IMG/VR virus record: IMGVR_UViG_3300033995_001164 | Coordinates: 245,178-309,177 of that record | Strand: one strand, 5' to 3' | Length of the DNA: 64,000 nucleotides | Shown: one piece after another, positions 32,393-64,000 of the stretch | Layout of the letters: each line of letters begins with the position of its first letter | How positions within the stretch are numbered: position 1 is the first letter of the stretch | Translations under genes and position numbers: made by a program | The notes under the pieces: model-generated | The model's database searches: none | What the model saw: only the letters and a program-made list of their open reading frames with translations | What the model was told of the DNA's origin: nothing

Positions 32393-33421
32393 TCAATCAA
32401 CATTATTTTTTAAATATTTTTCAACAAATTTTTCTTCATATCTTTTTGTAAAAATAATTTGTTTTGTTTCATACAATTCTTTTAATTTTTTAGACGATAA
32501 ATTAGGTGTATCTCTTAATTTGTATGTAAGATTATTTTCATCACAAAATTTAATTGCCGATATTTTTTTTCTAACCACCGAATCACTATACCAAAGTTTT
32601 TTTGGCTTAATTTCTATTAAATATTTGTTTTTTAATATAAAATCAGCGGTATAAGTTCTGTTATTACCTTTATAATCAGTATAATTTATCTGATACATAT
32701 TAGATTCTGCATTAATCCACTCAATGTTATTTTTTTCAATAACATTAATCATGTATGATAATTCTTTAATACTTCTAAAAAACCAATTATTATACCATCC
32801 TGACCAACCATTACCGGAACCAACAGGACTTGGTTTTCCAAACATTGGGTTATTCTCTCCCGAACTATTTTTAGATTGTTTTATTTTTAATTGTTCTAAT
32901 TTAACATTAGCAATTTCGGTTCCATATTTTTCAACCCAAACATCATAGACAGATTTTCCAAACATAGGGTTATTCTCTCCTGAAGTATTTTTAGATTGTT
33001 TTATTTTTAATTTTTTCATTTTTTCTTCCGCAACTTCAACTCCATATTTATCAACCCAATAATAATAATAAGTAGAGTCCCCAAACATAGTGACATTACT
33101 TAATGATAAAATTCTCATTTTTTCCCTAAATTCTTCTGTTTTATATACTGAAAAATCTTTTTTTTCTCTCATTTTTTGTTTGGTGTCTTCAGTATGTTTT
33201 TTATTAAAAAATGGATTTAACTCACCAAATTTTCCAAACATAGGGTTATTGTCGCCAAGAACTCGTTGTTTCATACGTTCTCTCCTATCTTCGGTTATAG
33301 TTAATTTTAACCCACAACTTTTACAATTACTATTTTTGTTATCCGCTTTTATCATATTGTATTTGTTAGTGTAACTTATTGTTACACCACAAATAGGGCA
33401 TTTTCTTGTGAGATTTGACAT
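32393..33421 (-). CDS. homing endonuclease: zinc finger, NUMOD3 repeats and TnsA-like PD-(D/E)xK nuclease
   Basis: CPICG..CKSC; GENNPMFGK repeats; FRSIKEL, YTADF, IEIKP. Confidence 0.8.
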   Translation of the reverse strand: MSNLTRKCPICGVTISYTNKYNMIKADNKNSNCKSCGLKLTITEDRRERMKQRVLGDNNPMFGKFGELNPFFNKKHTEDTKQKMREKKDFSVYKTEEFREKMRILSLSNVTMFGDSTYYYYWVDKYGVEVAEEKMKKLKIKQSKNTSGENNPMFGKSVYDVWVEKYGTEIANVKLEQLKIKQSKNSSGENNPMFGKPSPVGSGNGWSGWYNNWFFRSIKELSYMINVIEKNNIEWINAESNMYQINYTDYKGNNRTYTADFILKNKYLIEIKPKKLWYSDSVVRKKISAIKFCDENNLTYKLRDTPNLSSKKLKELYETKQIIFTKRYEEKFVEKYLKNNVD

Positions 33422-44361: not shown

Positions 44362-45315
44362 CTAATTAATTTTAACACCCTTCTCAAGTGTTTCCTCAAG
44401 ATAATCTATAAAAGCTTTTGTTCTATCTTCTTTACCGTGATAATAATTACCATAACCTATTAGTTCTCCACTTTGGTCTGGTAATGGTTTTATTTCTTTT
44501 ACACCATTCTCAATTATATCACCAATCCAATCAACAACGACCTCATTCAATTTTTTTGTTTTTTTAACTCCATTTTTAATCACACCATCAATTCTTCCTT
44601 TGTGTTGATATACATCATAGTAAGTTTCATTAACACCCTTGTCAATCACCTTATCAATTATGTCTTCTCCCACATATTGTCGTGGGTTAGAACTTTTAAC
44701 ACCATTTTCAAGTGCATCATCAATGTCTCCGGTATATTCACGAGATTCTAATTTTGAAGTCATTTTCACTCCATCTTGTATGACAATTTCAATAACACAA
44801 GAACCATCCATTTGTAATGATTTGTTGGTTAGTTTCACCCCTTTAGTTTTCTTCACACCATCTTGTATGATGTCATCAACCTCACCTTCAGTAATGTTCA
44901 TTTCCAAACAGGTTTCTTTTACTCCGCCTTTAATAACATTTTCAACCCAACTTGTATTATCTTCCGGGTTCCAACAAGTTTCTTTAATCCCATTCTCAAA
45001 AACCTCCATCAGATTATATGATGGTGTTTGAGATGGTGACGCGGTATTCTTAGAACCATTCATTACATTATCTTCTACCCATTTTGTGATGAGGTGTTGG
45101 TTTTGAACAACCTCCAATGAGGCATACCCAAAAAGATTTTTAAAGAAATTAAAATTATACCACAGGGTTTTACTTTCAGTTAATTCTATCACCCATTGTT
45201 TGGACTCCGTAAAGATTAACCAAGTGGAACCATTATGATTATATGTGTCAACACCTTGGACAGAAGAATTAATTAAGGTGTTTATTATTTTTCCCATAAT
45301 CTTTTTATTAGACAT
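44362..45315 (-). CDS. homologue of the 62683 family with about 9 degenerate ~22-aa C-terminal repeats
   Basis: N-terminal WLIF..KQWVIEL..LWYN domain, then [V/I]xxxxxxG[V/I]KxT plus ~10 variable residues. Confidence 0.75.
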   Translation of the reverse strand: MSNKKIMGKIINTLINSSVQGVDTYNHNGSTWLIFTESKQWVIELTESKTLWYNFNFFKNLFGYASLEVVQNQHLITKWVEDNVMNGSKNTASPSQTPSYNLMEVFENGIKETCWNPEDNTSWVENVIKGGVKETCLEMNITEGEVDDIIQDGVKKTKGVKLTNKSLQMDGSCVIEIVIQDGVKMTSKLESREYTGDIDDALENGVKSSNPRQYVGEDIIDKVIDKGVNETYYDVYQHKGRIDGVIKNGVKKTKKLNEVVVDWIGDIIENGVKEIKPLPDQSGELIGYGNYYHGKEDRTKAFIDYLEETLEKGVKIN

Positions 45316-46127
45316 TATTTTTAAATATATTTGGTTGAATCTCAGCATCTTCAAAAGATTCTGTGGATACAAACTCACTTTTCAAATAATTAATTACATG
45401 TTCCATCATCTCGTAATCTTTAAAATCTCCGTTTTTATGTCCAGCCTTCATTAATAAAGACATACCCGCAGCCAACATCATTGTTGATTCCTTAACAGAT
45501 AATGCCTCTTGGTCTTTTGGGAATCCAATGTCAAAGTAGTTTCTATCGTTTTCACGTCTCCACGTTACACCAATTGTTAATCCATCCATTTGTTTCTTTT
45601 TTATTTGACAAAGATACGAATATTATTTTATATTTCCAAAAAAGTATGAGCAATAAAAAACCCACTGATTTGTGATAGGATTAATAATCCAATAAGATTC
45701 TTTGTATTCATAGCACACAAATCCCTCAATGGAATTATTTAGAACTTTATTAATTAACTTTTTCAAACAGTTCAAAGAATTTATCCTTATTGTTTTTTTC
45801 AGGGGGGAATATAAATGACTGAACATGGAATGATACAAATCCCATCTCACTACCGTAAGTCATTTTAAAATAATCATTAATCTCCGTACTATATTCATGT
45901 TTACTTTTCTTCATTCCATTGTGGTTATCAAAATGGATGTCAACTCCAACCAAATATTTATATATCGGGGAGAAGTTTATTGGGTCATATATAATTTGTT
46001 CCCTATATCCTGTGGAAACAACATCAATAATCTCGGGGCACATCTTCAGTATGACAACCTTTAATGTATCGGGGACTTCAATTTTCTTATCGTTCGGGGA
46101 TGGAAATAAAGTATCTTCATTTTTCAT
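45308..46127 (-). CDS. three hypothetical proteins (45308-45589, 45623-45850, 45750-46127)
   Basis: ORF track. Confidence 0.5.
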
Positions 46128-46177
46128 ATACTACTTTTTTACAAAGATATAACAAAGATTCCACATAACCAAAAAAA

Positions 46178-46240
46178 GGGTTGGGATTCCATCGAACGAA
46201 GTGAGTGACCGGACGAAGTGAGTGACCGGACGAAGTGAGA
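46178..46240 (-). repeat. dispersed intergenic element, copy 1 of 5, with an internal 17-bp tandem repeat
   Basis: GGGATTCCATCGAACGAAGTGAG core; other copies at 48545-48585, 49996-50030, 50579-50620, 51362-51402. Confidence 0.9.
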
Positions 46241-46648
46241 CTACTCCCGCCCCCACCCATAATGAACCACCTCCCCATCAATATATTCCTTCCAAGTTTT
46301 ATTCCATGGACCGGAAAACAATACGGTCATACATCCGTTACTATTAGAAATCCGGTGATATGAATCCCGGGGAAAATAAACCAAGACTTTCTCCCTACGA
46401 ACAATACGATATTCTCCACTAACCTCATCATCCAAGATTTGTTCATCATACTCACCAAACAGTTTCACAGACCACGCATTAAAAGCGTGGGTATGAAACC
46501 GGTCCTGACTACCAAGAGATTTATGAAAATAAAAAAAGATGATGGAGAATAACCACTTACACTCAAAGACCACGAATTGACTAACGACCTGTTCCCCGAA
46601 CTCGAACTTATTGTATTTTAGAAATGAAATTGTTTTTGTTTTTACCAT
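46241..46648 (-). CDS. cupin-like protein
   Basis: RFHTHAFNAWS..GEYDE..YHRI. Confidence 0.6.
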   Translation of the reverse strand: MVKTKTISFLKYNKFEFGEQVVSQFVVFECKWLFSIIFFYFHKSLGSQDRFHTHAFNAWSVKLFGEYDEQILDDEVSGEYRIVRREKVLVYFPRDSYHRISNSNGCMTVLFSGPWNKTWKEYIDGEVVHYGWGRE

Positions 46649-46773
46649 AATGAATATACCTTATGGAATAAAAGTATAATTCTAATTTATGGTTATGTCA
46701 AATAAAAAACCCCAAATCTAATTAAAGAAATGGGGTATGTTTAAAAACATATTGGTAACATTTTTTTTTTGTG

Positions 46774-47058
46774 TTTAAATTGTAATGATTCCCAACTTGC
46801 TCCCCTGTTAGAGTTAAAATGTTATGTTGTGACTATCTTTCAAATTGTGATGATTCCCAACTTTGAATTTCGTTGAGGCTAACTTACAGCGGTTGCGACT
46901 ACCTTTCAAATTGTGATGATTCCCAACTCAAAATGTTATTCAATTGGGGATTTTATGTTGTAACTACCTTTCAAATTGTGATGATTCCCAACCCTATTAA
47001 CGAGGTTTATATCGGTGTCCTCGTTGTGACTACCTTTAAAATCGAGACACATCCCAAT
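46774..47058 (-). CRISPR. CRISPR array associated with the TnpB/Cas12-like gene
   Basis: Consensus (+) GTTGTGACTACCTTTCAAATTGTGATGATTCCCAAC at 46826-46861, 46892-46927, 46957-46992; half-degenerate copies at 47023-47058 and 46774-46796; spacers 29, 30, 29 and 30 nt. Confidence 0.92.
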
Positions 47059-47255
47059 AATGGCTTTTCAAATGAAATTGTGATAGTCTATCCGTTCTCG
47101 GATAATGAGGTTTTGAGACCCCTAGCCGCCTAACCGTTCCGGCAATCACACGTTGACCGTGTTCTTTTACCCGGGTTATATCTGCATACAGTGTTTTAAC
47201 CTTTTAACGTGTTACACACACGCGAGTTACCAATATGTTTAAGAACTTTTTTATT
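47059..47255 (-). ncRNA. putative omegaRNA/tracrRNA-like scaffold
   Basis: Non-coding and GC-richer; hairpin 47089-47104; 47141-47150 reads UGUGAUUGCC on minus and can pair with repeat GGUAGUCACA. Confidence 0.7.
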
Positions 47256-47261
47256 ATGATA

Positions 47262-47269
47262 CAAAGATA
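47262..47269 (-). promoter_or_regulatory. TATCTTTG box driving the scaffold and array
   Basis: 5 nt after the nuclease stop codon, pointing into the non-coding region. Confidence 0.7.
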
Positions 47270-47274
47270 AGTAA

Positions 47275-48477
47275 TTATTCTCTAACTAACAAACTTTCTC
47301 TGATATTTTTTGCTGCGTTTATATCTCTATCGTGGTGTTCCTCACAAGACTTACAGGTCCATTCCCTTTGGGATAACTTTAACTCAGTATTTATATCCCC
47401 ACAGTTAGAACAAGTCTTACTTGTATTACGGGGGTCAATCCTATTAAATTCAATTCCTTTTGAATTACAAACACTTCCCAAATAATCGACAAATGAACGA
47501 ATCCCGATTCTTGCAGTGGATTTAGCCATATGTTTATTCTGTAACATAAATGACAAACGAATATCCTCAACTTGTATTTTAGAAAACTTACCTTTAGTTA
47601 AAACACCAACAACATATCTGTGATATTCTTTTCTAATATTATTTAATTCATTCTGTAATCTACCCTTCTTCTCAATTACTCTCCAATAATTTTTGGATTT
47701 AGGTTTACCCTTGTTTAATCTGTTCTTACGAGATATACTCTTTTGAATAATTGAAATCTTATCTTCCAATTTTTTAATCCTCTCAATTGGTACCTGATAT
47801 TTAAGTCCTTCGGATGTAATTGCCATATCTTTAATACCTACATCAATTCCCAATGATTTACCCGAACTATTAATCTTAACAATTTCAGTATCCTTTAAAT
47901 CCAATGTTAAAGATAAATACCAATTACCATCAGACTTCCTATGGATTGACATTAACTTTGGTGTAGACCCTTTGAATTGTTTATGAAACTTACATTTTAT
48001 AATTGGATTTATCCCAACTTTTTTAAGTAAAGTAGGAGCAAACCTAATTTCATTATTATCCCAATCCAAACTTAAACTTCCACGACTAATACTATTTGAA
48101 TTAGTCGTTAATTTCAATATATTCGTTTTTTTCTTATACGAAGGTTTTCTTGATTTTGGTTTTTTTCTGAAATTTTTAATTGATGTGACCAAAGATTCAG
48201 AAACATATTCCCTAAATATTGATGGAACATTATCAAACCAATTAATCGTTGAAAGATAATTAGAGAAAAGAGATTTACTCTTTAAGTTCGGAGCAGGAAA
48301 GTCCTTAAAATCTTTCCCATCAATAAATTCACTAACCAAAAGATTATATCCCCCTCTTAATTTATTACCAATATCAAATAACCATCTCTTTTGTTTATCA
48401 TCCGGGTATATCCTATACTCAACTGATACTCCAACATAAGATGGACCCTTTTTTCTTTCAACCAAAAAATGATTCAT
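47275..48477 (-). CDS. tnpB: TnpB/Cas12f-like RNA-guided nuclease, 400 aa
   Basis: YRIYP N-terminus, RuvC-I GIDVG, RuvC-II VED, zinc finger CSNC/CKSC, RuvC-III DRDINAAKNI; start 48477 follows TATATTTG at 48497-48504. Confidence 0.93.
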   Translation of the reverse strand: MNHFLVERKKGPSYVGVSVEYRIYPDDKQKRWLFDIGNKLRGGYNLLVSEFIDGKDFKDFPAPNLKSKSLFSNYLSTINWFDNVPSIFREYVSESLVTSIKNFRKKPKSRKPSYKKKTNILKLTTNSNSISRGSLSLDWDNNEIRFAPTLLKKVGINPIIKCKFHKQFKGSTPKLMSIHRKSDGNWYLSLTLDLKDTEIVKINSSGKSLGIDVGIKDMAITSEGLKYQVPIERIKKLEDKISIIQKSISRKNRLNKGKPKSKNYWRVIEKKGRLQNELNNIRKEYHRYVVGVLTKGKFSKIQVEDIRLSFMLQNKHMAKSTARIGIRSFVDYLGSVCNSKGIEFNRIDPRNTSKTCSNCGDINTELKLSQREWTCKSCEEHHDRDINAAKNIRESLLVRE

Positions 48478-48598
48478 ATATAATTTATTTAGAAAGCAAA
48501 TATAAAACAAAGAATTCAAATCACCAAATATATAATGAAAAAAAGGAATGGGATTCCCTCGAACGAAGTGAGAAACCGGACGAAGAGCACTATACGAA

Positions 48599-49929
48599 TT
48601 ACTCATCAGCAGGGATATTATTTAACCAATTATTAAAATATTGTGAAGTATCCACATGATTTAATCCAAATAGTTTTCTTATACTATTGTATAACTCAGA
48701 CTTCATAGATATTTTACTAACACTATGTGGTCTCGAACCAACCTTAACTCCATTCACAATATAATAATAACTAAACATCTTAAACGCCCTCTCAAAATGG
48801 TTACTCTCTTTCGATACCGATAAGGTGGGGTTATCACCAACAATAGAATTAAGATATTCATGAACCAATTTTTCCATTATGTTGTTTCATTAATATCGGA
48901 CATCACATAACCTTCAGGTGGAAAATGAACCAAACATCTTCCACTCTCTTTATAACAAGTACAATCCAATTCATCATCAATCTCAAATGAAGCACTGCTC
49001 ACCTTATCTTCGTAATTTGTGAAGAAATCATTAAAGATTCCCGTAATGGTCATTTTCTTTTTCACCTTACTTATTTTTTGAATAGTGAAACCCTTTGAGG
49101 GTCTATTGTTATCACAATGTTATTACTTGAATCCGCATACGAAGCAATGTCATCATCCAATAACATTTTATGGATATTATCATCATAATAAATCACCACA
49201 TCATTGTATGAGTAATGTGGGTAATGATTTTTGATTGGTTCCAATAGAACAACATCAGTACATTGACTAATGGCACCGTCCATAATGGATTTAATTAGTT
49301 CATAATAATATTGATTTCGGTTTTTCTTATACTCGTTCAATATATCAATTCGAGATAAGGGTTCAGTTGTTTTTGGTTTGGAGTTCCACATCATTTTTTA
49401 CTATTTCTATTAATTTTTTAAGACATTACATATTAAAGCTAACAATGGTAATGATAAGAGTAATAATGAAATTACTAACCCCCAATAATCTTTTATTTTT
49501 TGCATATTTCTATTAATTTTTTAAGTTTTGCTTCTTAACAATTTCTATCAACTTGACCAAACATTCAAGTTCTGCTTCTTCGTAAGTTTGAAAAAAAGTA
49601 TCCCATATTAATCCGCCTATTCTAAAATCACTATTATATTCAGTGATATTATCTTGGATATACCAACAATAAGGTTGTTGATATTTGTTTTCTTTAGTAA
49701 TCCAACTATCTAAATTATACTTCTCTCTAAACCATCTAAATGCTTGTTGGTAAAGTGGTGCTACAAATGTTGTTTTAGATTCTAATCTAAATTGAAAAGG
49801 AGCAGATATAGTTTCATTTGATATATAAACCTCTCTATCTTTACCTACATAATATCCTAAACAAGGTTCATCAAATCCTAATTCTTTTAAAGCTAATGCT
49901 TGTTCGTAAGGTATAAATTCTTTTTCCAT
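48599..49929 (-). CDS. four hypothetical proteins (48599-48877, 48877-49065, 49071-49394, 49513-49929)
   Basis: ORF track; 49513 has LKELGFDEPC..APLYQQAFRWFREKY..YEEAE. Confidence 0.6.
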
Positions 49930-52977: not shown

Positions 52978-53069
52978 GATAATAAATATATAATCTTATG
53001 TTAAATACGTCAGAGAATATTTTTAATATTCCGTTTGGCGGGGTTATTATAATGTTGTATCTTTGTACC

Positions 53070-53382
53070 ACTGAATCGGTAATCAACCCGACAGGGGGCG
53101 CAACAAGGGTTGGGGAGAGTGGACGGAGCAGCGCTCATACTTGACCTTTAGGTTAAGTTATATTTTTATATAAACCCCGCCCATTTGGTGATGACCGGAA
53201 ACAAAAAATTCCCACACGTAATGGACACGACAGAGAAGATTTTTAATCTTCCATTTGGTCCGGGTGTCGTAGACCGACACGCTAGTGGAGTAGGATAATG
53301 AATAGTTATATGTGGTTGTCTATAATTCCAAACTTTACGTCCCTAAGGTACTGAGTGGTTAATCCCCTACTGTGGGGGACAA
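53070..53382 (+). ncRNA. candidate ~310-nt structured RNA
   Basis: TATCTTTG at 53058-53065; no ORF; several perfect hairpins; terminal TCCCC..GGGGA stem. Confidence 0.45.
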
Positions 53383-53519
53383 TCATATTCCATTATAAAT
53401 ATAGTTGATTATATGTAAAATCAAATATTAATCATTATCTTTGTGGTTAATTAAATAATCATATGAGAACATTACTAAAATTCTTATTCCTTGGGTGGTT
53501 AGTCACCATAATATATAAC

Positions 53520-53786
53520 CTATTTACCGGTGGGGACAAACGAAGATATTAGTTCCTGACACTTGTTTAAGATGTCGAGTGAGGAATAATCCCCTCCCAT
53601 CTCATATAGTCCTTCTATCTTGGCGTCCACACACGCCCAAGAGTTCATGCTTATTGGTTTCCTATTAAACCCCGCCTTTACCTTCTCGAAGTATAGAACC
53701 CCTTTCTGATTCACATTGTTGTCTGAGATGACCACTCGAATCACCTTCTCATCTATATAATCTATGTTGAATATTAAATCTTCCAT
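53520..53786 (-). CDS. hypothetical protein
   Basis: ORF track. Confidence 0.5.
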   Translation of the reverse strand: MEDLIFNIDYIDEKVIRVVISDNNVNQKGVLYFEKVKAGFNRKPISMNSWACVDAKIEGLYEMGGDYSSLDILNKCQELISSFVPTGK

Positions 53787-54772
53787 TGTTTTCTTGTCCG
53801 GATAATACCGTATACAGTTAAATATAGTTATGGAACATATAAAAATAAAGTTATTAACAGGCGGGGAATGGTCCTGACGCTATGTCAGTTGATAAAAAAA
53901 AGTGTAGTTGTTGATAAGTTTGGGGGTAAATTATTAGGATTTGTCAAAATGTCAGTCGAGGTTTCGATAAGGGATAATCCCTTTCCCCGCCTTTGAGGTG
54001 TTAACAAGTGGGTAGTCCTCCCACATTTTACCACCATATCCTGTGTGGTTATAGTGTAAAGACCACTTTTTCCCCTCTCACGACCCCTACAGGACCAGTT
54101 TTTTACTATATATAAAACCTGGCAAAAACAGTAGTGAGTAGTACAAGAGGCGGGGAGTTCCCTTTAGGGAACCTATAATAGGACATTTATAACCTCAACG
54201 AGGGAACCGATACCCCTTAGTGAACCATTCTACGCCCCTGTCGGTAGACCGACCAAAGGGAGTTCGAAGGAAGACAAGTCGTAGGTGGTTATGTAATAAC
54301 CCCGACCATCGGGAGGTGGTAAGTCGTTAAAAGTTACTATTCATATCACTCATGTGAGTTTTAAACTGACTACACTGATACAAAACATAACTTATTATAC
54401 GGTTATGGATGGATTATACCTTAAGGGGTGTAATTGTTTACCGAAGGTATTGTCTTATACCCTAATAGGTATAATCCCCTCATTAACTACTAATACCACC
54501 TCATCATTGTCTTGTCGTTAGGTGGGGACAATACATTCAGGCGGGGAATTGTATATATTGTGAGTAAAACAATTATTATCGGGTTATTGGTAGTAATAAG
54601 GTTATGGACCGATAATGATTATAAGAAATAGTGAAGAATGAAACTATGAGTGAATCCGGAGTGGAGAGAGAACTGACCGACAGGGAAGTGGAACGGAACA
54701 TAGGTATGAACGAATGGTTTTAGTCTTTAGTATTTCTTTGTTATGTAAATCTTTATTATTATCTTTGTGATT

Positions 54773-60092: not shown

Positions 60093-60641
60093 ATGACAGA
60101 TAAACTAAAGCATAGAATCATTAACTACCTAAATAAAGAATATTCCGGGATTGTTGATTATGAAACGGATGATTGGAAAGAGCATATATTCTTTATGAAA
60201 GACGGGAAAGTTCTTAATTATTACAGTAAAATAAATGGGGTTGTTTATATCTCTTATTCTAAAATTTGGTCATTATTAGAAACCTTTTTTGGATTAAATT
60301 ATCAGGAAGTACAAGACCTAACAAAAATATGGGTGGAGGGGCATCACAGATTTAAGGTAACAACAACGGTCGAAGAAAGAGGAGAATTGATTGACTTGGT
60401 GGAGGAACATCACAGATTAAACGTAACAACAATCGTGCCGAATTGCTTTGTTCACTGGGACAAGGTGGAGGAACATCACAGATTAAACGTAACAACAACA
60501 AGACATGACCGTTATGGAAATGTTACACCGGAGGAACTTCACAAATTAAAGTCAACAACAACCTTCGGTTGTTTTATCGTTGATTTACCTTTGGTAGAAA
60601 ACCATTACAAATTAAACTACCCCGCTAACGGTGAAATATGA
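60093..60641 (+). CDS. 29759-family protein with a translated repeat-spacer tail
   Basis: Units VEEHHRLNVTTT plus 9-10 variable residues. Confidence 0.8.
   Translation: MTDKLKHRIINYLNKEYSGIVDYETDDWKEHIFFMKDGKVLNYYSKINGVVYISYSKIWSLLETFFGLNYQEVQDLTKIWVEGHHRFKVTTTVEERGELIDLVEEHHRLNVTTIVPNCFVHWDKVEEHHRLNVTTTRHDRYGNVTPEELHKLKSTTTFGCFIVDLPLVENHYKLNYPANGEI
60332..60617 (+). CRISPR. in-frame CRISPR-like array
   Basis: 36-bp repeats at 60332, 60398, 60464, 60527 and a partial at 60593; spacers 30, 30, 27 and 30 nt. Confidence 0.75.
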
Positions 60642-62171: not shown

Positions 62172-62696
62172 ATGGAAATAGATTTATCAAAATATAGTAT
62201 TGGGGAACTTATTGAATTACAGGACAAGATTGATAATACAATACATAACTACAAGGATGGTTATTTGTATATCTGTAATGTTCGTTCATATGGTCACAAT
62301 TGGAGAGACAATTGTATTCATAACATTCATACTCTTCAGCGACTTTGTCATAAGTATGGTGGTGAGGATGGTATTGTTGATGTCTATTCTAATAACCCCG
62401 ACCTTTCTATGATTGAGAACTATGGTGACCTTATGTATATCGTCTCCGAGTCCGACTATACTAAGTGGAAAGATTATGAATATCTTAAAGGTTTTATCCC
62501 CACCATTTCTAAACGATTGGATGAATGGGAGAATAGAGATAATATTCCTTTTCACTCTCGACCATCGTTTGCTCCGATGTATAGTAGAGAAGAGTTAAAT
62601 AATATGGTGGAAAAACTTGCTCACTATGATATGTCTTTTGTTGCTCCCACCCCTTATAAACCGAATGAAAATTTAGACACAGATGATTACAGATAA
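62172..62696 (+). CDS. hypothetical protein
   Basis: Start MEIDLS after the TATCTTTG box. Confidence 0.6.
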   Translation: MEIDLSKYSIGELIELQDKIDNTIHNYKDGYLYICNVRSYGHNWRDNCIHNIHTLQRLCHKYGGEDGIVDVYSNNPDLSMIENYGDLMYIVSESDYTKWKDYEYLKGFIPTISKRLDEWENRDNIPFHSRPSFAPMYSREELNNMVEKLAHYDMSFVAPTPYKPNENLDTDDYR

Positions 62697-63207
62697 ATTT
62701 AAAAGAACAATTTTTGATAAATTAACCGATGACCTATCTCATGTGGAATTGATTTTCTACAATGACTCCCTTTGGTTTATTAACCGAGAAAAGAAGTATT
62801 GGTATTTGGAATTAGAAAAATCAGGTAAATTATATTGGAGATGGCAATTCTTTACTAATTTTTTCTCTCCATTCACAATGGAACGAAATGAATATGAACC
62901 ACTTATAAAAGAATGGGTAGAGTCAGCATTAAATTGCGGGGTTACAACAACAGTAAACAAGGATTCAATCGCCGGATGGACGGTAGAGTCAGCATTAAAT
63001 TGCGGGGTCACAACAACTCAAATAGGCACCATCAAAAAACTGAAATGGGTAGAGTCAGCATTAAATTGTGGGGTGACAACAACGTTGTTGATGAAATTCC
63101 ACCAAAAACTATTGGTAGAGTCAGCATTAAATTGTGGGGTGACAACAACAGTACCATCTAAGTTATCCGTTGCAATAAAGGTGGAGTCAGTATTAAATGG
63201 ATTATAA
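62683..63207 (+). CDS. protein with a translated repeat-spacer tail
   Basis: Four units of VESALNCGVTTT plus 10 variable residues. Confidence 0.85.
   Translation: MITDKFKRTIFDKLTDDLSHVELIFYNDSLWFINREKKYWYLELEKSGKLYWRWQFFTNFFSPFTMERNEYEPLIKEWVESALNCGVTTTVNKDSIAGWTVESALNCGVTTTQIGTIKKLKWVESALNCGVTTTLLMKFHQKLLVESALNCGVTTTVPSKLSVAIKVESVLNGL
62916..63200 (+). CRISPR. in-frame CRISPR-like array
   Basis: GGTAGAGTCAGCATTAAATTGYGGGGTBACAACAAC at 62916, 62982, 63048, 63114 and a partial at 63180; four unique 30-nt spacers. Confidence 0.85.
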
Positions 63208-63272: not shown

Positions 63273-63734
63273 ATGATTACAGATAAATTTAAAAGAACAA
63301 TTTTTGATAAATTGAGTGAAGATTTATCCCATGTTGAGATAATATCATACCGTGATTCCTTTTGGTTTATTAACCGAGAGAAAAAATATTGGTATTTGGA
63401 ATTTAAATCTTCAGGCGAACTATATTGGAGATGGCAATTCTTTATTGAATTTTTTGAATTATTCACGATGGAGAGAAACCAATTCGAGCCAATCATATTA
63501 GAATGGGTAGAGAAAGTATTAAACCATGAGTTAATAACAACTGAAATCAATATTGGTAATCATGTAGGTATCGAAGAAGTCCTAAATGGCGGAGTGAAAA
63601 CATCGTATAGAGCAAATAAAGACGGATTTTTGGTGAGTTATATATTAAAGAAAGGTGTCACGGCAACCATTAGTAATCATATACGTGGTCTCAAATGTGT
63701 GGAGGAAATATTAAATAATGGAACAACAATATGA
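63273..63734 (+). CDS. paralogue of 62683 with decayed 21-22-aa repeats
   Basis: Near-identical N-terminus; VEKVLNHELITT, IEEVLNGGVKTS, VSYILKKGVTAT, VEEILNNG. Confidence 0.8.
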   Translation: MITDKFKRTIFDKLSEDLSHVEIISYRDSFWFINREKKYWYLEFKSSGELYWRWQFFIEFFELFTMERNQFEPIILEWVEKVLNHELITTEINIGNHVGIEEVLNGGVKTSYRANKDGFLVSYILKKGVTATISNHIRGLKCVEEILNNGTTI

Positions 63735-64000
63735 TTACAGATAAACTAAAACAATTTATTTTTAATAAATTAACCGATGACCTATCTCATGTGGAATTGA
63801 TTTCATATGAAGATTCCTTTTGGTTCATAGATAGAGAAAACAAATATTGGTATTTGGAATTTCAAAAGTCCGGCAGATTATATTGGAGATGGGGATTTTT
63901 TTCCAATTTTTTCCAATTATTTTGTATGGAAAGAGATGAATATGAACCACTTATCACCGAATGGGTGGAGTCAGTCCTAAATGGTGGGGTAACAACAACA
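63731..64000 (+). CDS. third paralogue, truncated by the window end; first repeat at 63964-63999
   Basis: MITDKLKQFIFNKL...EWVESVLNGGVTTT. Confidence 0.8.
   Translation, partial: MITDKLKQFIFNKLTDDLSHVELISYEDSFWFIDRENKYWYLEFQKSGRLYWRWGFFSNFFQLFCMERDEYEPLITEWVESVLNGGVTTT

What the first reader, a model, noticed from the sequence alone, without database searches (positions are those of the whole stretch)
62916..63200. Translated CRISPR-like array: 36-bp repeats plus 30-bp spacers add hypervariable 22-aa units to a protein
Seen: four 36-bp repeats ending in ACAACAAC, separated by four unrelated spacers of exactly 30 nt, plus a truncated last repeat, all inside one ORF. Differences among the four full repeats are all synonymous (TGC/TGT, GTT/GTC/GTG), and no spacer has an in-frame stop. 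Known: 36+30 is the geometry of type II and VI-B arrays. It also matches the TnpB-linked array at 46.8 kb, whose repeat shares the GGT-x4-ACAAC end. Inference: a Cas1-Cas2-type integrase inserts foreign 30-mers at a repeat that doubles as coding sequence, and selection keeps the in-frame products. That would be protein diversification by spacer acquisition, or a dual mRNA/pre-crRNA. I know of no described system like this.
Basis: partly seen in the sequence, partly recalled or inferred. Interest (0 to 1): 0.95.

Follow-up and report, generated by a model that had tools for sequence, protein, structure and literature searches.

The report
Translated CRISPR-like array in phage gene
A jumbo-phage gene family carries, inside its reading frame, a repeat-spacer array that looks and evolves like a CRISPR array but is translated into hypervariable 10-residue peptides kept by selection, which appears to be an undescribed way of diversifying a protein.

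Summary
ORF 62683-63207 encodes a 78-aa folded domain followed by four units of 36-nt repeat plus exactly 30-nt unrelated spacer, then a truncated repeat.

Across 127 arrays (690 units) from about 120 lake-metagenome and phage contigs:
- The repeat/spacer boundary is sharp to the nucleotide and lies one base off the codon frame.
- Synonymous sites in the repeats are homogenised (0.77 against 0.31 expected).
- Spacers are either the same or unrelated, with nothing in between.
- Arrays are colinear, with novel units concentrated next to the N-domain and decaying repeats at the stop end.
- Two strains identical over 8.6 kb differ by one 66-nt unit at the first position.

The array is translated and the peptides matter: 0 stops in 3570 spacer codons, and pN/pS of 0.19.

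The coding repeats are related, in register and in sense orientation, to the 36-nt repeat of a genuine non-coding array beside a Cas12f-like gene in the same phage.

Not shown:
- the source of the spacers (no protospacers found, though the control array also found none);
- the inserting enzyme (no Cas1 or Cas2 in the window);
- the protein's function.

Main rival: ancient cassettes shuffled by recombination.

I found no description of such a system in six literature searches. Interest is high.

The parts
62683..63207 (+). Gene with the translated array (174 aa): N-domain, four repeat+spacer units, truncated repeat and stop
   Evidence: ORF. There are 63 close homologues whose lengths step by 22 aa. 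Identical copies occur on independent contigs.
62683..62915 (+). N-terminal domain (aa 1-78), the 'leader-equivalent' upstream of the first repeat. The last base of its final Trp codon (62916) is the first base of repeat 1.
   Evidence: AF2 pLDDT is 75-92 with a helix, 4-strand sheet, 2-helix fold. pN/pS is 0.26. No Pfam, PHROG or PDB relative was found.
62916..62951 (+). Repeat 1 (36 nt; encodes VESALNCGVTT plus the first two bases of the last Thr codon)
62952..62981 (+). Spacer 1 (30 nt; peptide VNKDSIAGWT), N-proximal and therefore youngest
   Evidence: In IMG/VR only the phage's own contigs match.
62982..63017 (+). Repeat 2
63018..63047 (+). Spacer 2 (QIGTIKKLKW)
63048..63083 (+). Repeat 3
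63084..63113 (+). Spacer 3 (LLMKFHQKLL)
63114..63149 (+). Repeat 4
63150..63179 (+). Spacer 4 (VPSKLSVAIK), at the trailer end. It is shared with the diverged strain variant P0004/L144, whose N-proximal spacers differ.
63180..63207 (+). Terminal truncated repeat (VESVLNGL then stop). Its 5' part is kept and its 3' part is lost.
   Evidence: The Cas12f-linked array has the same kind of 3'-degenerate last repeat.
63273..63734 (+). Tandem paralogue (153 aa) with a degenerate, old-looking array
63731..64000 (+). Third tandem paralogue (223 aa, P0006), cut by the window end, with its first repeat at 63964-63999. Its first unit is the one that is present or absent between otherwise identical strains.
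60093..60641 (+). More distant paralogue (182 aa) with its own array. Repeats lie at 60332-60367, 60398-60433, 60464-60499 and 60527-60562 (VEEHHRLNVTTT). This repeat is the closest to the CRISPR repeat.
   Evidence: z = 6-7, sense orientation only
44362..45378 (-). Distant family member (338 aa) with the N-domain plus irregular, diverged repeats (VENVIKGGVKET type)
   Evidence: N-domain HMM hit. It belongs to the same branch as the 500-611 aa members.
47275..48606 (-). TnpB/Cas12f-like RNA-guided nuclease gene (443 aa)
   Evidence: Pfam Cas12f1-like_TNB 2.5e-20; PADLOC Cas12f/Cas14c 1.7e-31
46774..47058 (-). Non-coding repeat-spacer array downstream of the Cas12f-like gene. The 36-nt repeat is GTTGGGAATCATCACAATTTGAAAGGTAGTCACAAC and spacers are 29-30 nt. 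It is related in sequence, length and register to the coding repeats.
   Evidence: All three frames contain stops. The linkage is conserved in the 83%-identical homologue L138. Similarity to coding repeats.

Best explanation
The region is a repeat-spacer array of CRISPR geometry (36-nt repeat, 30-nt spacer) embedded in frame in a phage gene and translated.

Shown:
- The unit is defined at the DNA level, one base out of register with the codons.
- Repeats are copies of one another down to their synonymous sites.
- Spacers are mutually unrelated whole cassettes.
- Arrays differ mainly by whole 66-nt units.
- Novelty is concentrated at the end next to the N-terminal domain, and decay at the stop-codon end.
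- The reading frame is always open.
- Once present, each 10-residue spacer peptide is conserved as protein.
- The coding repeat is related to the repeat of a Cas12f-linked guide array in the same phage.

Inferred:
- New units arise when an integrase of the CRISPR-adaptation kind duplicates the first repeat and inserts a 30-nt fragment of less AT-rich, probably foreign, DNA. The integrase could come from the host or be encoded elsewhere in the 309-kb genome.
- Insertions carrying stops or frameshifts are lost.
- Units are later deleted or exchanged by recombination between repeats.
- The product is a protein with a constant domain and a growing string of constant 12-residue and variable 10-residue segments. 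It probably serves as a variable binding or decoy surface in phage-host or phage-phage conflict.
For: 1. Nucleotide-level unit. Within-array identity is 0.69-1.00 at unit positions 1-35 and 0.87-0.96 at position 66, but 0.23-0.33 (random level) at positions 36-65. The conserved G at -1 is not a protein constraint: K/E/Q/L codons at that site end in G 93-100% of the time, against about 30% in the N-domain.
2. Repeat copying. Identical-codon frequency at synonymous sites is 0.77 against 0.31 expected. The exception is the last codon (0.28), whose third base belongs to the spacer.
3. Cassette nature. Spacer identity within arrays is 0.283, equal to random (0.285). Only 1 of 1113 pairs reaches 60% identity. 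Pairwise mismatches are bimodal (0-6 or at least 10). There is no hypermutation: spacer pS is 0.177 against 0.157 in the N-domain.
4. Polarity and age. The fraction of units shared with another array rises from 0.24 (unit 1) to 0.68 (unit 6). 78 of 79 array pairs are colinear. Repeat divergence from the array consensus rises from 1.9 nt to 6.4-7.1 nt toward the stop. Shared repeat variants form single contiguous blocks at 32% of sites against 11% expected (0 of 500 permutations).
5. Microevolution. L141 and L002 are 100% identical over 4270 + 4374 nt and differ only by one 66-nt unit at the first array position.
6. Translation and selection. There are 0 stops in 3570 in-frame spacer codons (6.4% expected) against 4-8% in other frames. 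pN/pS is 0.19, p = 1.8e-12.
7. Kinship with a real guide array. Coding repeats match it at 20.1 of 36 positions in register, against 9.8 +/- 2.7 for shuffles. The match is stronger in sense than antisense and is concentrated at positions conserved between two Cas12f-linked repeats. The 60.1-kb paralogue gives z = 6-7. Both arrays have the same 36-nt length and the same 3'-degenerate terminal repeat.
8. Non-resident composition. Spacer GC is 0.405 against 0.317 for the loci, and a stop filter alone gives only 0.335. GC at 4-fold sites is 0.333 against 0.265 (N-domain) and 0.200 (other ORFs), with young spacers above old ones.
Against: - No protospacer was found: none in 0.6 Mb of related phage DNA, none in INPHARED for about 50 spacers, and none in IMG/VR for the two youngest spacers. 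The genuine array's spacers also found nothing, so database coverage is poor.
- No Cas1, Cas2, Cas4 or RT is present in the window, and no enzyme consistently neighbours the arrays.
- Polarity is a gradient, not absolute: 17 array pairs differ only at the stop end, and there are many internal differences.
- The single-unit polymorphism could be a loss rather than a gain.
- The window gene's own repeat matches the CRISPR repeat only weakly (P = 0.08).
- An older branch of the family consists of irregular, ordinary-looking repeat proteins, so the amino-acid motif may predate any DNA-level mechanism.
- The composition differences are modest.
- AF2 gives no confident model of the array part, so the protein's mode of action is unknown.
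Confidence: 0.6

Rival explanations
1. Ancient cassette pool with concerted evolution. The family is an old 22-residue repeat protein. Its spacers diverged to saturation long ago, while repeats are kept alike by gene conversion and selection. N-proximal units turn over faster because exchanges between paralogues or co-infecting phages are anchored in the long N-domain homology. No new sequence is ever inserted.
For: An older family branch has irregular, diverged repeats. Units appear in mosaic contexts and there are internal differences. Several paralogous arrays per genome can act as partners. No protospacers and no integrase were found.
Against: - The conserved G at -1 and the free base at +36 are both at the extreme edges of the homology block. 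Conversion should treat the two alike, yet one is 92% fixed and the other is random.
- Spacer synonymous sites are not equilibrated to the phage's usage (0.333 against 0.265 and 0.200), although they mutate at the normal rate.
- 60% of spacer clusters are singletons, and the youngest are found nowhere else in IMG/VR.
- Spacer length is exactly 30 nt in 91% of cases, whereas the old branch shows drifting lengths.
- The kinship with a non-coding guide-array repeat is left unexplained.
Confidence: 0.2
2. Dual mRNA and pre-crRNA. The transcript is processed at the repeats into guides for the phage's Cas12f-like nuclease or a host effector. The open frame serves expression or stability rather than a protein function.
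For: Coding repeats share the 3' half (AAGGTA..CACAAC) and the register with the Cas12f-linked repeat, in sense orientation. Every spacer is preceded by a repeat, as type V guides require.
Against: - Differences between orthologous spacers are mainly synonymous (pN/pS 0.19), and synonymous sites drift at the neutral rate of the gene. A guide should constrain all 30 positions equally.
- No anti-repeat or tracrRNA-like partner was found.
- No Rfam CRISPR-DR match was found.
- No targets were found.
Confidence: 0.12
3. Ordinary structural repeat protein (solenoid or LRR-like) whose loops diverged by point mutation under diversifying selection. The CRISPR resemblance is coincidental.
For: The 22-residue period with a conserved hydrophobic pattern recalls solenoid repeats. 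Short strands are predicted at each GVTTT.
Against: There are no intermediate spacer similarities. Selection on spacers is purifying rather than diversifying. The boundary lies off the codon frame and synonymous sites are homogenised. AF2 pLDDT is about 30-50 in arrays.
Confidence: 0.03
4. A reading of function that is compatible with either generator: the protein is a multi-core peptide precursor, cyanobactin/RiPP-like. It has a leader domain and constant 12-residue recognition sequences flanking hypervariable 10-residue cores that are released or modified.
For: The architecture of leader plus conserved flanks plus hypervariable cassettes matches. The array part is not predicted to fold. Cassette peptides are individually conserved. 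The window encodes a ClpP-like protease.
Against: No maturation enzymes lie next to the arrays in about 120 loci. The N-domain is a folded globular domain. The top PDB hit, a lasso-peptide RRE, is not significant (E = 1.1).
Confidence: 0.1
5. Cassette gene conversion from silent donors, as in antigenic variation. Each spacer is copied from an unexpressed library elsewhere in the genome.
For: Only about 74 kb of the 309-kb genome could be examined. Repeats would provide the flanking homology.
Against: No second copy of any spacer outside arrays was found in the window, in L002 or in 0.6 Mb of related loci. Arrays are inherited colinearly rather than reshuffled.
Confidence: 0.05

Closest known systems
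CRISPR arrays, especially those of TnpB-derived type V-F/V-U (Cas12f-like) systems and phage-borne mini-arrays without adaptation genes
   Same: - 36-nt near-identical direct repeats and unique 30-nt spacers of fixed length.
- Growth biased to one end, a conserved trailer end and a 3'-degenerate terminal repeat.
- Unit loss by repeat recombination.
- Sequence kinship with a Cas12f-linked repeat in the same genome.
- PMC10691335 notes that small TnpBs have multiple CRISPR associations, largely lacking adaptation modules.
   Different: - The array lies inside an ORF, fused to a protein domain, and is always stop-free.
- Its spacers are conserved as amino-acid sequence, not as nucleotide sequence.
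- There is no adjacent cas gene, no known targets and no evidence of processing.
Diversity-generating retroelements (DGRs)
   Same: A phage-encoded, DNA-level mechanism that diversifies a defined part of a protein.
   Different: - DGRs rewrite one variable region from a template repeat by adenine-specific mutagenesis with a reverse transcriptase.
- Here whole unrelated 30-nt cassettes accumulate serially and are then stably inherited.
- There is no RT or template repeat in the window.
Cyanobactin-type precursor genes with hypervariable core cassettes between conserved recognition sequences (recalled from the literature, not tested here)
   Same: Nearly identical flanking DNA with abruptly hypervariable short cassettes. 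The layout is leader plus repeated recognition sequence plus core.
   Different: Cassette number is small and there is no polar growth. Dedicated protease and cyclase genes are adjacent, and none are found here.
Assembly of lamprey variable lymphocyte receptors and bacterial antigenic-variation cassettes
   Same: Constant framework repeats carry variable inserts that are exchanged as cassettes through short homology.
   Different: Those systems copy from genomic donor libraries. No donors were found here, and new units appear at one end.
MIMIVIRE of mimiviruses (recalled; its interpretation is disputed in the literature)
   Same: Short repeated inserts inside a viral ORF were proposed as a nucleic-acid-based memory.
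   Different: There the same 15-nt insert is repeated and matches a virophage. Here the spacers are all different, of fixed length, flanked by true repeats, and have no known source.

Membership tests
CRISPR array | Near-identical direct repeats of 23-47 nt separated by unique spacers of similar length | tested here: met
   Repeats are 36 nt and 88% identical within arrays. Spacers are 30 nt in 91% of cases, with identity at random level.
CRISPR array | Polar (leader-end) addition of units, conserved trailer end, degenerate terminal repeat | tested here: met
   There is a sharing gradient from 0.24 to 0.68, and 78 of 79 pairs are colinear. An age gradient, a first-position unit polymorphism, block-wise repeat variants and a truncated last repeat are all present. 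The polarity is a bias, not absolute.
CRISPR array | Non-coding; transcribed and processed into guide RNAs | tested here: not met
   The array lies in a conserved ORF with 0 stops in 3570 codons and amino-acid-level purifying selection, while synonymous sites drift freely. Processing itself cannot be tested with these tools.
CRISPR array | Associated cas genes, including an adaptation module (Cas1-Cas2) | tested here: not met
   A Cas12f-like effector lies 14 kb away. No Cas1, Cas2 or Cas4 is present among 83 window ORFs or in the flanks of about 120 loci. The other 245 kb of the genome and the host were not examined.
CRISPR array | Spacers derived from foreign DNA (protospacer matches, PAM) | tested here: inconclusive
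   No matches were found, but the bona fide array's spacers found none either. Composition suggests a non-resident origin.
CRISPR array | Repeat sequence related to repeats of a recognised CRISPR-Cas system | tested here: met
   The register-locked match is 20.1 of 36 against 9.8 for shuffles. Gapped alignment gives z = 6-7 for the 60.1-kb paralogue. The match is weak for the window gene itself (P = 0.08). There is no Rfam CRISPR-DR hit.
Ordinary tandem-repeat (solenoid/LRR-like) protein | Whole repeat units alignable, variation graded, unit boundaries following structural or codon units | tested here: not met
   Spacer similarity is bimodal and the boundary is one base off the codon frame.
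Ordinary tandem-repeat (solenoid/LRR-like) protein | Confidently predicted regular repeat fold | tested here: not met
   AF2 pLDDT is 43-54 for the 4-unit array and about 30 for the 10-unit array. A weak alignment may contribute to this.
Diversity-generating retroelement target | Reverse transcriptase plus template repeat; variation confined to adenine positions of the template | tested here: not met
   There is no RT in the window. Spacers differ at all positions and no template copy exists.
RiPP / cyanobactin-type multi-core precursor | Leader plus repeated recognition sequences flanking variable cores | tested here: met
   This holds for architecture only.
RiPP / cyanobactin-type multi-core precursor | Cognate maturation enzymes encoded alongside | tested here: not met
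   Neighbours are small orphan families, a GT2 glycosyltransferase and a metallophosphoesterase.
Type V-F/V-U CRISPR-Cas (for the neighbouring 46.8-kb locus) | TnpB-derived RuvC nuclease next to a repeat-spacer array, with the linkage conserved among homologues | tested here: met
   PADLOC Cas12f 1.7e-31. The array is 215 nt downstream. The 83%-identical homologue L138 has its own 36-nt-repeat array. Nuclease activity and guide use are untested.

The most novel reading that the evidence does not exclude
Freshwater jumbo phages run CRISPR-type spacer acquisition on a repeat that is also a codon string, so captured 30-mers become heritable, selectable 10-residue peptides. This would be an adaptive, serially recorded protein repertoire in a virus. 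The coding arrays and the Cas12f-linked guide array would then be two states of one element: in the family's reading register the guide repeat differs mainly by one in-repeat stop codon. One acquisition machinery would feed both an RNA-guided and a protein-based arm.
Probability: 0.35. Interest if true: 0.97.

Novelty: categorically new. Interest (0 to 1): 0.9.

Why it matters
If the mechanism holds, CRISPR adaptation, or an analogue with the same 36/30 ruler, has been co-opted to write new coding sequence. That would be a third natural route to programmed protein hypervariation, besides DGRs and cassette recombination, and the first in which a chronological repeat-spacer record is translated.

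It would make several questions testable:
- how arrays without adaptation genes acquire spacers;
- how TnpB-linked arrays originate;
- whether short peptides encoded by arbitrary DNA can be recruited to function quickly.

It would also point to a natural scaffold for displaying peptide libraries.

Even under the main rival, the family shows unusually sharp nucleotide-level concerted evolution. It is also a systematic source of false positives, or missed positives, for CRISPR finders in phage genomes.

Tried and rejected
- Pfam and PHROGs on the repeat proteins gave no family.
- tblastn of the protein against INPHARED gave no match.
- Tandem Repeats Finder misses the array, because the units are only about 66% alike.
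- Rfam found nothing for the coding arrays, in gathering or E-value mode. For the true array it gave only a sub-threshold CRISPR-DR50 hit.
- There are no tRNA genes in the window.
- Fold search of the AF2 model found nothing significant in the PDB. BFVD returned only uncharacterised family members.
- Protospacer searches were all negative:
  - 357 unique spacers against 0.6 Mb of loci gave only truncated arrays and noise equal to the shuffled control.
  - Three INPHARED blastn queries covering about 50 spacers gave chance-level hits only.
  - Two exact IMG/VR scans of the youngest spacers matched only the phage's own contigs.
- Host search with the CRISPR repeat in GTDB genomes found nothing. 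The consensus I used does not occur exactly in any copy of the phage's array, so that scan was a weak test.
- An IMG/VR scan for non-coding arrays with the shared termini returned only mutated coding units and chance singletons.
- The search for an anti-repeat near the Cas12f-like gene found nothing above shuffle level.
- Young and old spacers show no difference in amino-acid composition or hydropathy.
- The idea that a stop-codon filter explains the higher GC of spacers is rejected: survivors reach 0.335 against 0.405 observed.
- The idea that spacers arise by duplication and divergence is rejected: adjacent spacers reach at most 50% identity, and no similarity class lies between 'same' and 'unrelated'.
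- From memory, the repeats resemble 36-nt repeats of Bacteroidota CRISPR systems. This was not tested and is not used as evidence.
Full report
**Observation.** ORF 62683-63207 encodes 174 residues: a 78-residue N-terminal part, four units of 36-nt repeat plus exactly 30-nt spacer, and a truncated fifth repeat that runs into the stop codon.
- Repeats: 62916-62951, 62982-63017, 63048-63083 and 63114-63149.
- Spacers: 62952-62981, 63018-63047, 63084-63113 and 63150-63179.
- Truncated repeat: 63180-63207.

The three variable repeat positions are synonymous. A second array with a different repeat (VEEHHRLNVTTT) sits in the paralogue 60093-60641. Two further paralogues follow in tandem, at 63273-63734 and from 63731 to the window end. 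Tandem Repeats Finder misses all of them, because the units are only about two-thirds alike.

**Context.** The window has about 30% GC. It is part of a 309-kb IMG/VR viral contig, and identical copies occur on several other contigs. Recognisable genes include ClpP, thymidylate synthase, a T4-type RNA ligase and homing endonucleases. Most ORFs are orphans. This is an accessory region of a jumbo phage from lake metagenomes. The host is unknown. Scans for the phage's CRISPR repeat in bacterial genomes found nothing, though the first scan was a weak test. Comparable freshwater huge phages have been assigned to Bacteroidetes hosts (PMC9723584), but I did not test whether this phage belongs to them.

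**The family.**
- The protein has no Pfam, PHROG or PDB relative. BFVD returns only uncharacterised proteins of uncultured phages.
- It has 63 close homologues whose lengths step by 22 residues. A profile search finds 821 representatives at 50% identity.
- I collected 123 loci and found every member with an HMM of the N-domain. That gave 138 complete distinct genes.
- I parsed them into 127 arrays with 690 units. Internal spacers are exactly 10 codons in 514 of 563 cases.

**The unit is defined at the nucleotide level.**
- Within arrays, repeats are 88% identical and spacers 28%, which is the random value. Only 1 of 1113 spacer pairs reaches 60% identity, and adjacent spacers never exceed 50%.
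- Codon choice at synonymous sites of the repeats is identical in 77% of comparisons, against 31% expected from the codon usage of the same genes. The exception is the last codon, at 28%.
- The per-nucleotide profile is razor-sharp. Unit positions 1-35 and position 66 are conserved, and positions 36-65 are at random level. The DNA repeat is therefore a 36-mer that starts with the third base of the codon before the first Val, and the DNA spacer is exactly 30 nt.
- That leading G is not a protein constraint. Lys, Glu, Gln and Leu codons at this site end in G in 93-100% of cases, against about 30% elsewhere in the gene.
- Protein-level selection cannot produce a boundary that is out of frame. Gene conversion should treat the two edges of the homology block alike, yet one edge base is fixed and the other is free.

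**The arrays evolve like CRISPR arrays.**
- Pairwise spacer mismatches are bimodal, 0-6 or at least 10 out of 30, with nothing between. Spacers are either the same cassette or unrelated.
- Arrays that share cassettes are colinear in 78 of 79 pairs. The fraction of units shared with another distinct array rises from 0.24 next to the N-domain to 0.68 six units in. Pairs that differ only at the N-proximal end outnumber those that differ only at the stop end, 36 to 17.
- Repeats diverge from the array consensus by 1.9 nt at the N-proximal end and by 6-7 nt at the stop end.
- Shared repeat variants split arrays into two contiguous blocks three times more often than expected (32% against 11%; 0 of 500 permutations reach the observed total). 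This is what copying from the first repeat predicts. The window gene shows it: repeats 1-2 carry TGC and repeats 3-4 carry TGT.
- Two independently assembled strains are identical over 4270 and 4374 nt on either side of a single 66-nt unit. That unit is the first unit of the third paralogue's array.
- A more diverged strain variant of the window gene keeps the stop-proximal spacer and has different N-proximal ones.
- The polarity is a bias, not a rule. Internal differences and mosaic contexts show that loss and exchange by recombination between repeats also occur.

**The array is translated and the peptides matter.**
- The 357 distinct spacers contain no stop in 3570 in-frame codons, where 6.4% is expected. 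The other five frames have 4-8% stops.
- Variants of the same spacer in different arrays differ mainly at synonymous sites. pN/pS is 0.19, p = 1.8e-12 against neutrality. This is as strong as in the N-domain (0.26) and the repeats (0.38).
- Their synonymous divergence (0.177) equals that of the N-domain (0.157). Spacers are therefore not hypermutated, and they carry no extra nucleotide-level constraint. The second point argues against a guide-RNA role for established spacers.
- AF2 models the N-domain confidently (pLDDT 75-92) but not the array part (43-54 for four units, about 30 for ten units). An ordered solenoid is not supported, and the mode of action of the protein is open.

**What the spacers are made of.**
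- Spacer GC is 0.405, against 0.317 for the loci and about 0.28 for the N-domain. A stop-codon filter applied to phage 30-mers gives only 0.335.
- GC at four-fold sites is 0.333 (CI 0.309-0.360) in spacers, 0.265 in the N-domains of the same genes and 0.200 in other phage ORFs. Young spacers stand at 0.352 and old ones at 0.317.
- Young spacers have flat GC over the three codon positions. Older ones show coding-like periodicity.
- Amino-acid usage follows random-codon expectation (r = 0.81) slightly better than the proteome (r = 0.71), with mild enrichment of Gly, Asn, Asp and Glu.
- This fits import of arbitrary DNA from a less AT-rich source followed by filtering and slow amelioration. The effect sizes are modest.

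**Kinship with a genuine guide array.**
- The 443-residue ORF 47275-48606 is a TnpB/Cas12f-like nuclease.
- 215 nt downstream lies an array of 36-nt repeats with 29-30-nt spacers. It has stops in every frame and a spacing that breaks frame.
- An 83%-identical homologue on another contig has its own downstream array with a diverged 36-nt repeat, so the linkage is conserved.
- Small TnpBs with CRISPR associations that lack adaptation modules are documented (PMC10691335).
- The coding repeats are related to this repeat:
  - The 60.1-kb paralogue aligns with z = 6-7, in sense orientation only.
  - The commonest family repeat matches at 21 of 36 positions (0 of 5000 shuffles).
  - Over 80 distinct coding repeats the register-locked match averages 20.1 of 36, against 9.8 +/- 2.7 for shuffles.
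  - Matches concentrate at positions conserved between the two Cas12f-linked repeats (0.66 against 0.38).
- In the family's reading register the guide repeat reads L-G-I-I-T-I-stop-K-V-V-T-T. Its last 14 nt encode the same KVxTT as the coding repeat.
- Both kinds of array end in a repeat whose 3' part has decayed.
- The window gene's own repeat is the weakest match (16 of 36, P = 0.08).
- The coding repeats are one homologous family, so this amounts to one strong comparison, not eighty.

**What is missing.**
- No spacer matches anything outside arrays in 0.6 Mb of related phage DNA, in INPHARED or, for the two youngest spacers, in IMG/VR. The Cas12f-linked array's own spacers also match nothing, so the negative result mostly reflects database coverage.
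- No Cas1, Cas2, Cas4 or reverse transcriptase is present among 83 window ORFs. No enzyme is a consistent neighbour of arrays in other phages.
- Four-fifths of the genome and the host remain unexamined.
- There is no anti-repeat near the nuclease gene.

**Interpretation.** The best-supported reading is a translated repeat-spacer array that grows mainly at the N-domain end. Growth occurs by duplication of the first repeat with insertion of a new 30-nt cassette. Units are lost and exchanged by repeat recombination. Insertions are filtered for open frame, and their peptides are then conserved.
- The DNA-level unit, the cassette nature, the polarity, the translation, the selection and the kinship with a guide array are shown.
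- The use of a CRISPR-adaptation-type integrase and the foreign origin of spacers are inferred.
- The strongest rival is an ancient cassette pool kept in register by concerted evolution and reshuffled by exchanges anchored in the N-domain. An older, irregular branch of the family and the missing protospacers support it. The asymmetric edge conservation, the strict 30-nt length, the non-equilibrated synonymous composition and the link to a non-coding array argue against it.
- A dual mRNA/pre-crRNA role is possible for new spacers, but the free drift of synonymous sites disfavours it.

**Novelty.** Six literature searches, plus targeted look-ups within three papers, found no description of a translated repeat-spacer array. 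The nearest known systems are CRISPR arrays, DGRs, cyanobactin-type hypervariable cassettes and cassette-based receptor assembly. Each shares only part of the picture.

Noticed in passing
window 46774-48606 (-); L138:2525-4245: A compact Cas12f/TnpB-like nuclease with a downstream 36-nt-repeat array and no adaptation genes sits in a jumbo phage. In both homologues the first repeat copy keeps only its 3' half and follows a roughly 215-nt spacer region that could be an omega-RNA or tracr-like scaffold. The last copy decays into a poly-A run. It looks like an intermediate between a TnpB guide and a CRISPR array.
   Followed up: partly
window 46745-46759 and 47226-47240: A perfect 15-nt inverted repeat (AAACATATTGGTAAC / GTTACCAATATGTTT) brackets the whole array plus the putative scaffold region. 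It may be a long-range processing stem or an element boundary.
   Followed up: no
window 46174-46243: A fragment resembling the 5' part of the CRISPR repeat, in the opposite orientation (GGGTTGGGATTC), is followed by a perfect 17-nt tandem repeat of 2.6 copies (ACGAAGTGAGTGACCGG). Both lie on the far side of the cupin/cysteine-dioxygenase-like gene.
   Followed up: no
window 62646, 63236, 63694 (starts of a 300-nt repeat family): The duplication unit of the tandem paralogues begins 37 nt upstream of each start codon, with a conserved CCCACCCCTTATAAACCGAATGAAAATTTAGA element. At the first copy this element forms the 3' end of the preceding ORF. It may be a shared promoter or translation signal.
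   Followed up: no
window, ORFs not localised: PADLOC hits among window ORFs include a Csx1-like protein (8.7e-26), two PDC-S10 proteins (4.7e-73) and a weak CARF hit. Pfam finds a cREC_REC cyclic-phosphate-processing receiver domain (2e-20). These may be cyclic-oligonucleotide signalling or counter-defence genes.
   Followed up: no
L002:11763-20438 and the flanks of many loci: The arrays sit among other multi-copy families of small orphan proteins with stereotyped N-termini (MKYLITESQL..., MNLQENI.RI..., MKNIHIIGTDKPSRL...). One of them ends in a WVEETL motif like the junction of the N-domain and the first repeat.
   Followed up: partly
window 32834-33059: A 120-nt tandem repeat (1.9 copies, 83% matches) lies inside the NUMOD3 homing-endonuclease-like ORF 32393-33421.
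   Followed up: no
window about 52980-54760: This stretch has the highest GC in the window (0.39) and no ORF of 90 aa or more. No tRNA or Rfam match explains it.
   Followed up: no
window 44362-45378 (-); P0147, P0151, P0165 and others: A branch of the same family reaches 500-611 aa, with a diverged VEDTIQNGVKET motif and irregular 8-14-residue linkers. These are either fossil arrays or the ancestral ordinary repeat protein.
   Followed up: partly
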